This document shows, piece after piece, positions 12,070 through 31,507 of a stretch of DNA of 64,000 nt (the stretch's first letter is position 1; every line of letters starts with the position of its first letter). The DNA is from Lepidodermella squamata. Lineage: Eukaryota > Animalia > Gastrotricha. Position numbers and translations under genes: made by a program. Under the pieces are notes generated by a model. The model did not search any database and was not told the DNA's origin. It saw nothing but the letters and a program-made list of their open reading frames with translations. Location: the NCBI GenBank assembly GCA_047495785.1, contig JBLDXI010000017.1, positions 1 through 64,000 of the forward strand. The letters run 5' to 3'.

Positions 12070-14435
12070 TTTGGCCAAAAAAACACTATGATGAATGCAG
12101 AGAAAAAAATCCAAAGAATATGCTGTTGAATGGACGACCGTTTAGAACATTTTGCTTTCTTCCATGACCAAGCTAGGACAATGCCTTCAGATAGCGTAAG
12201 GATTCCTCTGCATATCAAAAGTGCTACTGTGAATCGTGATAGCCCAGTTGATGATAATTGTTTCGGCTGTGAACGGGAAACTGCAGTCAGTTATTCTACA
12301 CTAATTTGTGTCATACTTTGTCGCTGCCATAGTCTAGAATCCTGAGATGTGCGTATTTCATAGTGTCAAGATGTCGTTGAAATTGTTCTATCCAGTCGTT
12401 TGTCCCGGGTAGCTTCTCGAGTTTTATCGTCGCTCTGACGGTTTGCTTGTCACCAGTATGCAGTCTTCGAGCTGTTGCATCTAGAAAAAAAGAACTGTTG
12501 TGATTCAAACGCTTCATCGCGGGTGTATATCGTAATTTTTTAATTGCCGAATTCGAAGAAATTTTAAAGGTCGAAACATTGCATAAGCATAAGAACCTGA
12601 TGTTGAGTAAATTTGATTGGAGAAAACGACGTGCCGAAATTCTGAATGACATTCGATTAGATCGGGCAACCTATTGAAGGGTAAAAATGGTTGATACAGC
12701 GTGAGAAATATCGAAAGGTTACAGTTCGCATCTTTGCAAATGGCGAATCAATGCGGTTATGTTCTCAGGTCGACACAGATCGTCGAGCAGGGTTCGATTA
12801 TTTTGCGTGTAACTCAATGGACTCTCCACAAAGCACACACCAGTGGCTTTTGATCTTGCGCATATTTTCCCGAATTTAGTGCGGTTAGCTGTTATACGCC
12901 GCATATCACTGTTTAGCAACCGATCGAGCTAAGAATATGTAACAATTTAGGAATTTTAATTAGGGTGAATTCAAGTTACATCATCAAGAAAGGCGCACGT
13001 TGTCGACTCTTTTTCACGAGCAATTAAAATGCTGAACGAGATGGGCGATTTCCTACACGAACATTCGAATGTAATAGCAGTCAATGCAGAAAACGTATTT
13101 ACTTACTGCTCAATAGCTTTGATCGCGTCGCTGCAGAAATCAGTTTTAGCCATAATAAGGCTACTGGCGCCAGAAATGAAGAGAACTCCCATGAACACGA
13201 TACACACCCAGTTCACGTACAACAACCATATTTCTTGATTACGCAGAGCTTCGGCATTCTGCTGATTCTGTTGATGCTTGGGAAACATCATCCAACCACA
13301 CATCAAAAAAATAACCGAAACTACGAAAGTTGGCAACACCACGGCGGCTCTCGTAGCGTATTCACTTAAAGGATTGATTTCATTCCATTCTTTCATCCTC
13401 TCAGAGCAACGTTCAGCAGATAAACAATCTGTGCAGTGAGCTGTACTTGAATCGCACGTTTGTGGCCTATTGTAAGGCGGAGCTCGTAGGACTTCCGCAC
13501 TGCCTCCAACGCGGCATTCATTAACGTACTGCCCATTCTTTGCAATGCAAAATACAAGGCTGTAATTTGCCAAGGGATTGCCGAGAGTTTGCTCGAAAAA
13601 TTGTCTCAGGTCACAATCCAGTTTAGTGTCTTCTGCCTCTATTCTGCTTTTAACGCAAATTGTTCGCACCACGGAGACATTCGAGACCGGCTGATATGAT
13701 TTGCTGCATGCATCGTAGATGGCATTTGCGTAGCTCGGGTCCATGAAAACCAGATATCTGACTTTATTGGTTCCGGGGATTAGCACCCGAGCGATATACT
13801 TGCTTTGGCTGCCAGAGCAGATGATCTCACAAACTGCCTGATCGAGGGCGGCGACGCAAGAAGGAGAACGCGGGAACATTTTGGCGTTGTACTCAAAAGC
13901 ATCAGAAAGAACGTCAGCGACTTGCTCATTTGAGCAGCATTGGAAACGATCACTTCCAGGGTGGCCTCAAGTAAGAAGAAGGCATAGCATTTATAATAAA
14001 CTGTGTCAATAGTTCTCACAATGGAATAAGAAATTCGCTCACTGAAGCAAAATAAAAAAATTGTGAAAAATTTCGCCCGATTTAGGCGAATTTCCGGTGA
14101 CCATCGTTCCGGTGTCACTCCGATTTTGTTTATCACACGATATTACAGGGACACTCAAATTCAGAAATTATTACATTGAAGTCCTTTTACATTAAATATC
14201 GTGACTCGATTTAGCAACTTACATTTGGTTTTCAGTAATGCATAACTATTTTCATAGAGAGCAGAGGGAGAACGAGGCTTTTGAAACACGCAGCTGGCTG
14301 AGCCATATGCAGTACAATAGCTTAGGACAAAAATTATAACCTGGTCAATTCAAAAAATTAACCACCTTACTCCTATAAGATGAAAGGAAATCTTACCCTT
14401 GCGATAGCGATAGCTTGTGACAAGTCTGTGGCCAT
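12070..14435 (-). CDS. NPC1-like gene 1, copy 4 (probably the native locus), truncated mid-exon at 12070
   Basis: Contiguous with single-copy DNA to the right. The reading frame runs into the spacer (RATIKLEKLPGTNDWIEQFQRHL; KCSKRSSIQQHILWIFF), matching paralogue segments RLTIKLANKQESHAQEWL and DCKKRSRWQKSIL. Confidence 0.7.
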
Positions 14436-15152
14436 GATGCTTCGTTCAACTGAACCCGATTTTCGGTCTCTGATAAAATGGGATGAAAAACTTGTGATTA
14501 CTCTTATATTATGTTATATTAGTGATTCATCATAATTAAGATGGTTTCGTTGTGCTTTTTGCAGTTTATGGACTAAAATGGAAACTTTCAATGATATGTG
14601 TGCGTGTGCAGCGTCATGATAGAGATAACGGCTTGTTTTCGCCGAGGTATTACTATCTTTAATGTACCAACAACAGTAGCTGATATGGCTGGGCGAGTTA
14701 AGCGAGAGACTTGGTATCAACCGCACGAGCCACTGGACCTCGATTTCTATTTATTTCATGTCTGCATGCACTGGGAAGGGCATAATGAAGTTTCGATGAC
14801 TGTCAGTTGACTAATACAGCATTACTTGGAGATGCTTTATTATAATATTAGAGCGAGTTGACATTATTATAAAACAATTCTTCTTTCAACTTGAAAAATG
14901 AAGTTGGAGATTCGCATTCACAATCTATGTTCGAAAACGTACGGCTGTAATGCAGTGGCAGGACCTAATCATTTTTCATCTTTTAAGCAAATGCCCTTAG
15001 CGCCTGATAACAGTTTTGACATCTAAGGGTCCATGGCGGTGAATTTCTGGAGTCATGATCCGACACTGAATGCTGCGAGAATGAAATGAATTACAATTTA
15101 TTCATGTTGACTCCGCAAAAAAATGATTAAGATGATGGCTCGCTTTTATTGC

Positions 15153-16202
15153 TCACAGATCATAATCGAAACTGCGGCTTCTATATTTTGACCTTTCCAG
15201 TTGTGCTATTTGGGCATTGATCTCTTTGGGTTTATAGGCCAAGCGTCTGCATTTTGGATGTCGCTTGTCTGAGCGACATAACGCAATCAAAGTGTGCCAA
15301 GCTATGACCGCTGGATCGATCTTTGCATCTGCATTGTTGTCTTCAATTTTGACAGGCGGCTCGTAGACCTTATCCCAAACCGTTTTCAAATGCTGATGCA
15401 TTCCTAGCTTAGCAGGATACAACATTCGTAACACATCCAACCAAGAAACCAGGTGTAACTTTGCAGGAGCATTGCCAGTTTCAGTGTTGAATTCTTCGAC
15501 GGATTCTCTGATGAGACAACTCAGTTGAATGGTATCCGCTGAATAACCGCAGTTAGCGTCGATTTGAGGTGCCGGTGTGTTGTCATTGAACAAAGTTATC
15601 TTCATCAGCCCTCCTTTCCTATAGCCAGTTTCTACCCCTTGGACCAAGTGGGTGCCGTATTCCTCAATGAATAAATTGAAATCTGCCAAATCGGTAGAAT
15701 TTTCCAGCATTCGAATTCCATTTTTAAATTTTTCCGACCATAAAGTGTCTCCATTACTGATATTGATATGAGCCCGATTGCCGTCGAAATGGTTATTTGA
15801 CCAAACCAAGAGTCGATCGAGCTGATCATGCCTCATATATTTCTCGAACTTGATACTGTTTCGTGTAAACGCCGCTTGCCTTTCAGGCTCGTTTGTTAGG
15901 CTGTTGTTTAATGAATCCAACAAGATCTTTTGCAAGCTCTCCGATCCGACATAACCATATCTATTGCAGGTTGTTTTCTGCTCACCATTAGATTGATAGA
16001 TTACTCCATCGGATACCATCACAGTCCATCTGCCATTGGTGAGTACAGATCTCCGGTAGCCTGGGTCTTGGCTACTAAGAGGAAAGCCTTTGATAAGGTC
16101 ATAACCACGTCCCAGAAAAGGATTCTCCTCTTGACAGACTACATTTTGAGATGGGAAAGTCAGCAGAAGTAAAGCCAATAGTAAATTTGTTGTTGATCCC
16201 AT
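15153..16202 (-). CDS. Secreted MACPF-domain protein, copy 4 (intact, 349 aa, probably native)
   Basis: Same motifs (FLGRGYDLIKG, EEYGTHLVQG). ATG at 16202 precedes the signal peptide. Differs from the copy 1-3 consensus by 7 substitutions and a Thr insertion. Confidence 0.78.
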   Translation of the reverse strand: MGSTTNLLLALLLLTFPSQNVVCQEENPFLGRGYDLIKGFPLSSQDPGYRRSVLTNGRWTVMVSDGVIYQSNGEQKTTCNRYGYVGSESLQKILLDSLNNSLTNEPERQAAFTRNSIKFEKYMRHDQLDRLLVWSNNHFDGNRAHINISNGDTLWSEKFKNGIRMLENSTDLADFNLFIEEYGTHLVQGVETGYRKGGLMKITLFNDNTPAPQIDANCGYSADTIQLSCLIRESVEEFNTETGNAPAKLHLVSWLDVLRMLYPAKLGMHQHLKTVWDKVYEPPVKIEDNNADAKIDPAVIAWHTLIALCRSDKRHPKCRRLAYKPKEINAQIAQLERSKYRSRSFDYDL

Positions 16203-30420: not shown

Positions 30421-30801
30421 TGTGGATGTGGAATTGTGTTTAGTGGATGAATGCTGAACATGGATTTATTCATGCGGGACAATTGTTGAACTTCTCCCCT
30501 GTAAAAACTCCCTTGTACTCGCCAACAGGCCTGTTTACATCAAAAATCCACACATGAGGTACCAAGAATGATCTCTTGGCACATCCCGGAAAGAGCATTC
30601 TCAATGCGTACTTGTTTTCACATTCCCAATGATATTACATGGAAAAAAGCGTTATCGCCGGCAGGATTTATTTGCTCGAGGACGGAGATAACTTATTAGC
30701 TTATTATCAAAATTGACAAGTAACATCATCATTTCTCTTGAATTCAGAATTGATTGTTTAAAAAGGTGGTCGAAAAGCGACGAAGATACTTTTTGAGAGA
30801 C

Positions 30802-31507
30802 ATGAATGATATATTTTTACTTTTAGTATTAGTCTGCCTCACTGTATGCACTGTTTCAACAGAATCAGAGCCTGTAGCCCCGAAAGTCAGAAGCTGCTAT
30901 TACTGTAACCCAGCATCCGAGAACTGTACAAACCCGGCAATTAAATTGCTCACCAAGAAATGCGATCCTCACGAGGGCTTCGGATGTGCCATTTCTAAGC
31001 TCAAGTAAGACTGGACAGGATTTCAAATTCCATGATAACCTATGCTTTCATTTTCTTAGCGGAGGAAGATTTTGTGCAACTCTATATGAGACGAAAAATT
31101 CGAAGAATTGCGTTTTTTGTGACCAAGACGACTGTAATGGACGCGGAGGGCGGATTTTGGTGAGAGCTCTACAACTGGCAGTTCAAAAAATCAAAACAAC
31201 TCAAGTGATGACACAAGCTGAGTCTGCAGCTGCGATCTCATACCAAGATAAACCATTAGCTGAGGGCATGGAAAACAAGTCTTCGATTTCCAATGACCCA
31301 GAACTTCGCGACGATCGTCTAATCAAGATTTTGTTCCTATCAATTGTAGTGGTCGCTGTGGTAGCCGTCATAGCAGCGATCCCCATTTACATTTTTTGCA
31401 AAAGACGGAAACATAATAATATAAGGAGCAGGGGTCCAAGTGAATCGGAACGAGACAACAGCCCAAAGCTGAAGCCAACAGAAGATGACGCATTCACTTT
31501 TCCTTAA
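30802..31507 (+). CDS. Ly6/uPAR (LU, three-finger)-like type I membrane protein; exons 30802-31004, 31060-31507
   Basis: Signal peptide; RSCYYC...C...C...C...C...CVFCDQDDCN ending in the CxxDxCN signature; TM ILFLSIVVVAVVAVIAAIPIYIFC then basic KRRK; 55-nt GT-AG intron keeps frame. Confidence 0.7.

What the first reader, a model, noticed from the sequence alone, without database searches (positions are those of the whole stretch)
12070..31507. Repeated MACPF -> NPC1-like gene pair: candidate sensor, pore-former and regulator cluster
Seen: twice on the same strand a secreted MACPF gene lies just upstream of an NPC1-like gene (gaps ~490 bp at 28642/28151 and ~720 bp at 15153/14435). The two pairs are highly diverged yet the NPC1-like genes keep the same 5' exon structure, so the pairing is old. 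A CARD-only gene lies between the pairs and an LU-domain gene flanks them. Known: perforin-2 and NPC1 both act in endolysosomes, and many MACPF/CDC pores are lipid- or sterol-dependent. Inference: a co-regulated defence or cell-death system, for example guarding or targeting sterol-containing phagosome or symbiosome membranes.
Basis: inference. Interest (0 to 1): 0.85.

Follow-up and report, generated by a model that had tools for sequence, protein, structure and literature searches.

The report
Duplicated MACPF, LU and NPC1-derived gene block
An unnamed small animal genome carries, at two unlinked places, the same tight block of genes (a small helical CARD-like protein, an LU-type membrane protein, one or two secreted pore-former genes, and a stripped-down NPC1 relative with a CARD-like tail); this looks like a defence cassette, but its function is untested.

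Summary
The two MACPF -> NPC1-like pairs are real at the stated coordinates, and the NPC1-like genes share their 5' intron positions.

Three corrections:
- The second pair lies at the contig start, inside a 4-copy fold-back of about 4 kb at 99-100% identity (1-16382). This is probably an assembly artefact. Its NPC1-like gene is cut off at 12070.
- The two MACPFs are not duplicates of each other. One is a long type, the other a short type.
- The "NPC1-like" proteins keep NPC1's three lumenal domains in order but have no detectable sterol-sensing/Patched membrane domain.

New here: an unlinked locus on contig C3 holds the whole set in one orientation: CARD-like gene, LU gene, long MACPF, short MACPF, NPC1-like gene with a CARD-like tail. 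In both loci the tail has a stand-alone paralogue (84% and 37% identity). The window's copy is expressed and under purifying selection (dN/dS 0.34).

"CARD" rests only on a sub-threshold Pfam hit in the C3 copy. No relatives were found in other species. The one probable RNA data set shows separate mRNAs at very different depths.

Verdict: a block that duplicated as a unit, and a plausible but unproven sense/kill/protect module.

The parts
1..16382 (.). Fold-back at the contig start. Layout: unit 10-3908, loop 3909-4250, inverted unit 4251-8109, unit 8173-12069, loop 12070-12412, inverted unit 12413-16382. Only 12070-16382 should be trusted.
   Evidence: the repeat finder and self-BLAST give 99-100% identity in alternating orientation. 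The window is C17:1-64000. The outer copies carry stop codons in the MACPF2 frame.
12070..14435 (-). NPC1-like gene 2 (N2), 5' part only. Exon 1 is 14435-14397, exon 2 is 14340-14223, and the N-terminal-domain exon runs 13965-13107. Further middle-lumenal-domain and first TM exons continue down to the fold-back at 12070.
   Evidence: Pfam NPC1_N 45 bits. 31.5% identical to N1 over 298 aa. Custom NPC1 profile E 2.6e-12 covering the N-terminal and middle lumenal domains. Splice sites.
15153..16199 (-). MACPF2: a short (348 aa), secreted, strongly diverged MACPF on a single exon.
   Evidence: Pfam MACPF 19-20 bits, below cut-off. 32.8 bits against a MACPF profile built from this genome, aligned from the N-terminal LGxGYD motif to the YGTH signature.
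16600..17031 (-). LU-like first exon (17031 to about 16855) and an uncertain continuation. It may be a degenerate second LU gene.
   Evidence: 55% identity over 38 aa to exon 1 of the LU gene at 30802. No clean gene model could be built.
17764..18214 (-). Stand-alone gene for the CARD-like domain: exons 18214-17948 and 17892-17764, with a 55-nt phase-0 intron.
   Evidence: 84% aa identity to the N1 tail, dN/dS 0.34, dS 0.27. Variants in the X1 contigs at 23751-23761 (depth ~100-135) match this copy, so it is expressed. No Pfam hit.
18835..22092 (+). Short LTR element carrying only a gag-like ORF (19064-20050). It is inserted between the two units.
   Evidence: The 247-nt terminal repeats 18835-19081 and 21846-22092 are 99.6-100% identical. 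Two CCHC-type zinc-knuckle motifs are visible in the ORF, but Pfam gave no hit.
23617..28151 (-). NPC1-like gene 1 (N1): 12 exons, 1270 aa. Order of parts: signal peptide, NPC1 N-terminal domain, TM, middle lumenal domain, TMs, C-terminal lumenal domain, TMs, CARD-like tail (last two exons, 24540-23885 and 23829-23617).
   Evidence: Exon chain by dynamic programming. Custom NPC1 profile: N-terminal domain E 1e-13, middle domain 5.6e-9, C-terminal domain 3.6e-6, collinear. No Patched/SSD hit. The last intron, 23884-23830, is seen as a joint in an X1 contig.
28642..30420 (-). MACPF1: a long-type secreted MACPF (592 aa, single exon) with a Cys-rich C-terminal region of about 230 aa.
   Evidence: Pfam MACPF 37 bits. 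Its best paralogue in the genome is the C3 long MACPF, E 3.8e-32. X1 contigs cover it at depth ~62.
30802..31509 (+). LU (Ly6/uPAR-type) type I membrane protein in two exons, divergent from MACPF1.
   Evidence: The model shows 9 Cys ending in the C-terminal CN motif, followed by a TM helix. No Pfam hit for this copy; the C3 counterpart's best hit is CD59 at E 0.0017, below cut-off.

Best explanation
Shown.
- A lineage-specific block of unrelated genes has been copied as a unit.
- On contig C3 it is intact and all on one strand. The order is: a soluble protein with a CARD-like helical domain, an LU-type membrane protein, a long MACPF, a short MACPF, and an NPC1-derived multi-pass protein.
- That NPC1-derived protein has a cytosolic tail carrying a paralogue of the same CARD-like domain.
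- The C3 gaps are 94, 69 and 201 nt between LU, the two MACPFs and the NPC1-like gene.
- In the window the block is split into two units: [LU, long MACPF, N1 with tail] and [CARD-like gene, LU-like remnant, short MACPF, N2].
- So each unit keeps one MACPF together with its own NPC1-like gene.

Inferred mechanism.
- The genes work together as a membrane-attack cassette.
- The NPC1-derived protein has kept NPC1's lumenal domains but lost a recognisable transporter core. I read it as a receptor for a lipid or sterol-like ligand on the lumenal or outer side.
- Its death-fold-like tail signals in the cytosol. The stand-alone copy of that domain acts as an adaptor or a decoy.
- The secreted MACPFs are the effectors.
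- The LU protein protects the cell's own membrane, as CD59 does against C8/C9.
For: Block paralogy.
- MACPF1's best paralogue is C3 3684395-3682716 (E 3.8e-32; 26% over 572 aa).
- The C3 NPC1_N gene lies 1.8 kb downstream of it on the same strand.
- A second, short MACPF lies between them, and an LU ORF lies just upstream.

NPC1 descent.
- A profile of 19 full-length NPC1 proteins matches the C3 model at E 1.5e-72 and N1 at 5.5e-21. The N-terminal, middle and C-terminal lumenal domains come in order (exon level).
- The C3 N-terminal domain hits the human NPC1 NTD structure at E 3e-10.

CARD-like tail and its stand-alone paralogue.
- Tail versus stand-alone paralogue: 84% identity in the window and 37% (E 3e-15) on C3.
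- All four domains have a phase-0 intron at the same place.
- Pfam CARD scores E 0.0019 on the C3 stand-alone exon. That exon is one of only two weak CARD hits in the whole genome, and it sits 3 kb from the C3 block.
- The window's stand-alone copy is expressed and constrained.

Spacing.
- The LU-to-MACPF gap holds an AATAAA and an acceptor-like site shortly before the next ATG. The MACPF-to-MACPF gap also has an acceptor-like site, but its AATAAA comes after it, so that gap is ambiguous.
Against: - All copies descend from one ancestral block, so the linkage is one historical event kept by default, not repeated independent assembly.
- The only expression data are contigs of a run guessed to be RNA. 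They show very unequal depths and no read-through between MACPF1 and N1.
- The CARD label is weak. There is no Pfam, Atlas or PDB-profile hit for the window's copies. Cross-locus similarity of the tails is not significant.
- The LU/CD59 link rests on an 18.5-bit hit below cut-off. LU genes elsewhere in the genome are not next to MACPFs.
- No sterol-sensing domain was found, so a sterol role is only by descent.
- No other species could be examined.
Confidence: 0.42

Rival explanations
1. Passive paralogy. An ancestral chance neighbourhood of unrelated, fast-evolving membrane and secreted genes was copied by segmental and tandem duplication. It has simply not been broken up, because the block is small and tightly packed. 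The genes act independently.
For: - Every instance traces to one block.
- Depths of MACPF1, N1 and the CARD-like gene differ 20-fold or more in X1.
- The wider region looks like a birth-and-death zone. It has two more MACPFs at C17:66-68 kb, a Cys-loop channel array, and LTR insertions.
- On C30 another MACPF sits next to a Patched-related gene. That MACPF belongs to a different subfamily, which fits chance adjacency.
Against: - Five different gene types are retained in the same order at 26-37% identity.
- After the tandem duplication in the window, each unit kept an NPC1-like gene and at least an LU exon beside a different MACPF.
- The tail domain and its stand-alone copy stay matched within each locus.
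Confidence: 0.4
2. Operon-like packaging without shared function. The genes are co-transcribed as a polycistron and resolved by trans-splicing, as in animals that have operons. Linkage is then kept for transcriptional reasons only.
For: The C3 gaps of 94 and 69 nt leave no room for ordinary promoters. The LU-to-MACPF gap holds an AATAAA followed by a pyrimidine tract and AG about 16 nt before the next ATG. The second gap also has an acceptor-like site, but its AATAAA comes after it, so it is ambiguous.
Against: - Whether this organism trans-splices is unknown.
- The window's gaps are longer (490 and 717 nt).
- The X1 contigs show no shared leader among the loose ends listed.
Confidence: 0.12
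3. The second pair is not a separate functional unit. It is a decaying or mis-assembled copy, so the 'repeat' in the window is partly an artefact.
For: Pair 2 sits in the 4-copy fold-back at the contig start. N2 is incomplete, and the LU-like gene beside it gives no clean model.
Against: - The innermost copy has intact frames for MACPF2 and for every N2 exon up to 12070, with good splice sites.
- N2 differs from N1 by about 68%, so it is a distinct old gene and not an assembly duplicate of pair 1.
Confidence: 0.06

Closest known systems
NPC1 / NPC1L1 / NCR1 sterol transporters (RND superfamily)
   Same: They share a signal peptide, a Cys-rich N-terminal domain (Pfam NPC1_N), a TM helix, a middle lumenal domain, a TM block, a C-terminal lumenal domain and a final TM block, all collinear with a profile of canonical NPC1.
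   Different: - No sterol-sensing or Patched match in the TM region; the NPC1 profile leaves its positions 634-864 unaligned.
- Only about 9-11 hydrophobic segments against 13 or more in canonical proteins.
- A long cytosolic tail carries an extra helical domain, plus an ankyrin-like stretch in the C3 gene.
- Canonical NPC1 genes exist elsewhere in the same genome, on C55, C15 and C20.
CD59 and the complement MACPF proteins C8/C9
   Same: An LU-fold membrane protein is encoded beside secreted MACPF proteins. The best Pfam hit of the C3 LU protein is the CD59 family.
   Different: - The hit is below cut-off (18.5 vs 33.9 bits).
- The LU proteins here have a TM anchor rather than an evident GPI signal.
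- In vertebrates the CD59 and C8/C9 genes are not neighbours (my own knowledge).
- Binding is untested.
Caspase-1 CARD and the neighbouring CARD-only proteins (COP, INCA, ICEBERG) in primates
   Same: A small gene made of little more than a copy of the interaction domain of a larger neighbouring gene. It is kept similar to that gene and is expressed. The comparison with the primate genes is from my own knowledge.
   Different: The parent protein here is a multi-pass membrane protein, not a protease. The domain is only weakly CARD-like by sequence. The pairing is seen in two old paralogous loci.
MPEG1 / perforin-2
   Same: A MACPF domain followed by a Cys-rich C-terminal region, in an intronless gene.
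   Different: There is no C-terminal TM helix. There is no sequence match to MPEG1 structures; the best profile match in the PDB is perforin-1 at E 0.02.

Membership tests
MACPF (Pfam PF01823) | Score above the family's gathering cut-off (21.5 bits) | tested here: met
   MACPF1 37 bits, C3 long type 55 bits, C3 short type 33 bits. MACPF2 scores only 19-20 bits but 32.8 bits against a MACPF profile built from this genome.
MACPF (Pfam PF01823) | Signature Y/W-G-T/S-H ... GG and two helical clusters that refold into beta-hairpins | tested here: inconclusive
   YGTH is present in MACPF2 and the C3 short MACPF, FGTH in the C3 long MACPF, and YGFH in MACPF1. The fold was not obtained: the single-sequence model of MACPF2 had pLDDT 34.
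NPC1 family | N-terminal sterol-binding domain (Pfam NPC1_N, cut-off 27 bits) | tested here: met
   C3 gene 92.5 bits, N2 45 bits, N1 25.7 bits (27.4 with its neighbours in frame). C3 domain against the human NPC1 NTD structure, E 3e-10. The Atlas nearest clusters are all NPC1_N.
NPC1 family | Middle and C-terminal lumenal domains in NPC1 order | tested here: met
   Profile of 19 canonical NPC1 proteins. C3 model: profile positions 49-634 at E 6e-50 and 864-1156 at E 1e-26. N1: 446-567 at E 5.6e-9 and 894-968 at E 3.6e-6.
NPC1 family | Sterol-sensing / Patched transmembrane domain (PF12349, PF02460) | tested here: not met
   No hit at E <= 1 on any TM exon. The genome-wide Patched search finds 34 places, none in these genes. 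The custom NPC1 profile leaves the sterol-sensing region (profile positions 634-864) unaligned in the C3 model and in N1; N2 is cut off at the fold-back before this region.
NPC1 family | Thirteen transmembrane helices | tested here: inconclusive
   A crude hydropathy scan finds about 9-10 strong segments in N1 and the C3 model, against 13-15 in two canonical proteins scanned the same way. The gene models are my own and unverified.
CARD (Pfam PF00619, death-fold) | Score above cut-off (23.9 bits) | tested here: not met
   Window copies: no hit even at E <= 10. C3 stand-alone exon 2: 18.6 bits, E 0.0019, covering profile positions 42-83 only. Because an intron splits the domain, each search saw only half of it.
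CARD (Pfam PF00619, death-fold) | Six-helix bundle fold | not testable with these tools
   The domain is split by a 50-55 nt intron in all four copies.
LU / Ly6-uPAR three-finger domain | Eight to ten Cys in the LU spacing, ending in CN | tested here: inconclusive
   The Cys pattern and terminal CN are visible in the LU1 model and in the C3 ORF. The only Pfam support is CD59 at 18.5 bits, below its 33.9-bit cut-off.
MPEG1 / perforin-2 | MACPF plus P2 domain plus C-terminal TM helix | tested here: not met
   No TM helix at the C-terminus. No MPEG1 chain among the PDB matches.

The most novel reading that the evidence does not exclude
An NPC1-derived membrane protein has been converted from a transporter into a transmembrane innate-immune receptor with a death-fold signalling tail. 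It evolves together with a matched stand-alone copy of that tail, one or two MACPF effectors and a CD59-like protector. Together they form a self-contained sense/kill/protect cassette that duplicates and diversifies as a unit.
Probability: 0.2. Interest if true: 0.85.

Novelty: new variant of a known kind. Interest (0 to 1): 0.58.

Why it matters
Three things would be new if the block is a working unit.
- It would be a rare animal case of a multi-gene defence cassette kept together through duplication.
- It would show NPC1's lumenal architecture re-used as a receptor joined to a death-fold-type tail. I found no description of such an architecture: two full-text searches for MACPF with NPC1 gave nothing relevant.
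- It would place a pore-former and an LU-fold protein side by side. That would make the origin of CD59-type self-protection testable outside vertebrates.

If the block is only passive paralogy, the result is still useful. It corrects the annotation in three ways: the fold-back at the contig start, the two MACPF subtypes, and an NPC1 relative without a sterol-sensing domain.

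Tried and rejected
- **MACPF1 homologues.** The word-indexed search with MACPF1 gave no hit.
- **Exhaustive profile search with the N-terminal-domain exons.** The best hit was E 1e-19. The ten hits I scanned with Pfam (nine of the 24 best, plus two lower ones) were all canonical NPC1 proteins or fragments. This species' own proteins are absent from the library. Context look-ups in other species were therefore pointless.
- **Two metagenome scans** (long-MACPF and N-terminal-domain alignments). No relatives found.
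- **Structure of MACPF2 from a single sequence.** pLDDT 34, unusable. The second structure job was not spent because no deep alignment could be built for any part.
- **Complex prediction of the C3 long MACPF with the C3 LU ectodomain.** No verdict (score 0.21, mark 0.34). This is not evidence either way.
- **CARD-like domain.** The Atlas search on the N1 tail gave no usable hit. PDB profile searches with each half of the domain found no CARD. Folding or scanning the spliced domain was left out, because a spliced sequence has no reference.
- **Perforin-2 reading.** Rejected.
- **'The CARD gene is really the gag ORF at 19064-20050'.** Considered and rejected. They are different features.
- **A genome-wide rule that LU genes neighbour MACPFs.** Not found.
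- **The C30 Patched-related -> MACPF adjacency as a further instance.** That MACPF belongs to another subfamily, so I treat it as probably chance. My rough expectation for such an adjacency somewhere in the genome is about 0.05.
- **N2 as a frameshifted pseudogene.** Rejected. The apparent shift is an extra intron of about 118 nt.

Full report
**Where the window lies and what is repeated**

- The window is the first 64 kb of contig C17 of a 121-Mb, 151-contig assembly.
- Positions 1-16382 are four copies of one unit of about 3.9-4.0 kb in alternating orientation, at 99-100% identity. Two copies of a 343-nt loop in opposite orientation (3909-4250 and 12070-12412) and a short central spacer separate them.
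- The outer copies carry stop codons in the MACPF2 frame; the innermost copy does not.
- A fold-back of this kind at a contig end is most simply an assembly artefact.
- Only 12070-16382 should be counted. Whatever follows 12070 in the real genome is missing.

**Genes of the finding, all on the minus strand unless stated**

- **MACPF1** (30420-28642) is an intronless 592-aa ORF. It has a signal peptide, Pfam MACPF at 37 bits, and a Cys-rich C-terminal third.
- **N1** starts 490 nt downstream of MACPF1.
  - An exon-chaining script gave 12 exons (28151-23617), 1270 aa, with introns of 41-174 nt.
  - The start and the end agree with the coordinates another first-stage note gives for this gene.
  - The last intron (23884-23830, GTGAGT...CCCAG) appears as a joint in a contig of run X1.
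- **MACPF2** (16199-15153; the listed ORF reaches 16451) is a 348-aa secreted protein.
  - It is below Pfam's cut-off (19-20 bits).
  - It scores 32.8 bits against a profile I built from ten other MACPF ORFs of this genome, aligned from the N-terminal LGxGYD motif to the YGTH signature.
- **N2** starts at 14435.
  - Its first exon is 39 nt, as in N1.
  - Its second exon ends inside the same Cys codon (phase 1) as in N1.
  - Its N-terminal-domain exon is 31.5% identical to N1's over 298 aa.
  - An apparent frameshift further down is an extra intron of about 118 nt.
  - The gene runs into the fold-back at 12070.

**What the NPC1-like genes are**

- Pfam NPC1_N scores 45 bits on N2, 25.7-27.4 bits on N1, and 92.5 bits on a third relative on contig C3.
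- The C3 domain matches the solved human NPC1 N-terminal domain at E 3e-10.
- A profile of 19 full-length canonical NPC1 proteins, returned by the representative search, aligns collinearly with my spliced models.

| Model | Profile positions matched | Domain E-value |
|---|---|---|
| C3 gene (overall 1.5e-72) | 49-634 | 6e-50 |
| C3 gene | 864-1156 | 1e-26 |
| N1 (overall 5.5e-21) | N-terminal domain | 1e-13 |
| N1 | middle lumenal domain | 5.6e-9 |
| N1 | C-terminal lumenal domain | 3.6e-6 |

- The exon-level searches agree.
- The transmembrane core does not match.
  - No Patched or sterol-sensing hit appears on any TM exon.
  - None of the 34 Patched matches in the genome lies in these genes.
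  - The profile leaves positions 634-864 unaligned.
  - A crude hydropathy scan finds about 9-10 strong segments, against 13-15 in canonical proteins.
- Canonical NPC1 genes with both domains exist on C55, C15 and C20.
- These are therefore NPC1-derived proteins that keep the lumenal architecture but probably not the transporter machinery.

**The tail and the 'CARD-only' gene**

- N1's last two exons encode a helical domain of about 95 aa.
- A two-exon ORF at 18214-17764 is 84% identical to it and has the same 55-nt phase-0 intron.
- Over 106 aligned codons dS is 0.27 and dN/dS is 0.34, so both copies are constrained.
- The 'other letters' that X1 shows at 23751-23761, at depth about 100-135, are exactly the bases of the 17.8-kb copy. 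So the small gene is expressed, at a higher contig depth than N1's own tail.
- No Pfam, Atlas or PDB-profile search labels the window's copies as CARD. The sequence pattern looks death-fold-like to my eye, but that is not a test.

**The third locus: the main new result**

On contig C3, all on one strand, lie the following:

| Gene | Position on C3 | Support |
|---|---|---|
| Soluble protein ending in a CARD-like domain | about 3689118-3688191 | Pfam CARD E 0.0019 on its last exon |
| LU-type membrane protein | 3685236-3684634 | best Pfam hit CD59, E 0.0017, below cut-off |
| Long MACPF | 3684539-3682710 | 26-30% identical to MACPF1 |
| Short MACPF | 3682640-3681459 | Pfam MACPF 33 bits |
| NPC1-derived gene | from about 3681257 to about 3675630 | tail has an ankyrin-like stretch and a CARD-like domain |

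- The CARD-like exon of the first gene is one of only two weak CARD hits in the whole genome.
- The tail domain of the NPC1-derived gene is 37% identical (E 3e-15) to the stand-alone one.
- All four CARD-like domains have a phase-0 intron at the same point.
- Cross-locus similarity of these domains is not significant.
- The C3 gaps are 94, 69 and 201 nt. The LU-to-MACPF gap has an AATAAA followed by a pyrimidine tract and AG shortly before the next ATG. The MACPF-to-MACPF gap also has an acceptor-like site, but its AATAAA lies after it, so that gap is ambiguous.

**History**

- MACPF1 pairs with the C3 long MACPF.
- MACPF2 and the C3 short MACPF share size and an N-terminal motif only (E 0.002).
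- MACPF1 and MACPF2 are not detectably alike (E 0.15).
- N1 and N2 are each other's closest relatives.
- LU1 and the LU-like exon at 17031 are 55% identical over 38 aa (all).
- A simple reading:
  - The ancestral block was [CARD-like, LU, long MACPF, short MACPF, NPC1-like with tail]. It is kept on C3.
  - On C17 it was duplicated in tandem.
  - The short MACPF was then lost from the first unit and the long one from the second.
  - LU1 was inverted, and an LTR element was inserted at 18835-22092.
- Each surviving unit thus keeps one MACPF with its own NPC1-like gene and at least the remnant of an LU gene.

**Expression**

- Run X1 is only guessed to be RNA. However, it covers exons in patches, is absent from most introns and from the bin 28400-28599, and contains the spliced joint.
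- MACPF1 contigs have depth about 62 and the N1 exons 2-4.
- There is no read-through between MACPF1 and N1. Contig depth is a poor measure, and mature mRNAs would not show a polycistronic precursor.

**Comparison with known systems**

- The long MACPFs are not perforin-2-like. They have no TM tail, and the best solved relative by profile is perforin-1 at E 0.02.
- The LU-beside-MACPF arrangement recalls CD59 and C8/C9. The evidence is one sub-threshold hit, and LU genes elsewhere in the genome are not MACPF neighbours.
- The small tail-copy gene recalls the CARD-only genes next to caspase-1 (my own knowledge).
- Two literature searches for MACPF with NPC1 found nothing relevant.

**Other species**

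- No relatives beyond canonical NPC1 were found in the 1.8-billion-protein library. That library does not contain this species' own proteins.
- No relatives were found in metagenome contigs either.

**Verdict**

- The linkage is a property of a whole five-gene block, not of a MACPF/NPC1 pair.
- I rate a functional cassette (receptor with a death-fold-like tail, matched adaptor or decoy, MACPF effectors, LU protector) at about 0.4.
- Passive paralogy of a compact neighbourhood is about equally likely.

Noticed in passing
window 1-16382: Four alternating copies of a ~4 kb unit at 99-100% identity, at the very start of contig C17, with two 343-nt loops. This is probably an assembly fold-back. It inflates the copy number of MACPF2 and of the N2 5' part.
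   Followed up: partly
window 42981-51958: A complete-looking LTR retrotransposon with identical 195-nt LTRs and high G+C (0.50-0.57). On the minus strand it has three long ORFs of 523 aa (zinc knuckle), 1518 aa and 708 aa (no Pfam hit). It interrupts the ion-channel array. Observed only.
   Followed up: no
window 37400-42900 and 52600-59850: A tandem array of diverged Cys-loop ligand-gated ion-channel genes on the plus strand (Pfam Neur_chan_LBD and Neur_chan_memb), spaced about 1.8-2.3 kb apart.
   Followed up: partly
window 18835-22092: A 3.3-kb element with 247-nt LTRs (99.6-100% identical) and only a gag-like ORF with two CCHC-type motifs seen by eye (no Pfam hit). It lies about 620 nt upstream of the small CARD-like gene.
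   Followed up: partly
G000:C17:66151-68360 (just beyond the window): Two further MACPF genes in divergent orientation (Pfam 91 and 82 bits), with no NPC1_N hit nearby.
   Followed up: no
L033/L034 = G000:C30:654953-661883: A Patched-related gene is followed about 660 nt downstream, on the same strand, by a MACPF gene of another subfamily. A Cys-loop channel gene lies on the other strand at 662561-663822. This may be chance or an older paralogon.
   Followed up: partly
L023 = G000:C3:3675233-3675398: A degenerate extra copy of the second CARD-like exon lies just downstream of the C3 NPC1-like gene's stop.
   Followed up: no
L024 = G000:C3:3681257-3685236: The gaps between LU, long MACPF, short MACPF and the NPC1-like gene are 94, 69 and 201 nt. 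The first has an AATAAA followed by an acceptor-like site; the second is ambiguous. The layout is operon-like.
   Followed up: partly
L027 = G000:C20:1213892-1215300: A gene that appears to hold only an NPC1 N-terminal domain lies about 5 kb downstream of a canonical NPC1 gene.
   Followed up: partly
whole genome G000: Only two weak Pfam CARD hits and about three caspase loci were found genome-wide, against about 34 Patched-domain matches and about 25 MACPF loci.
   Followed up: no
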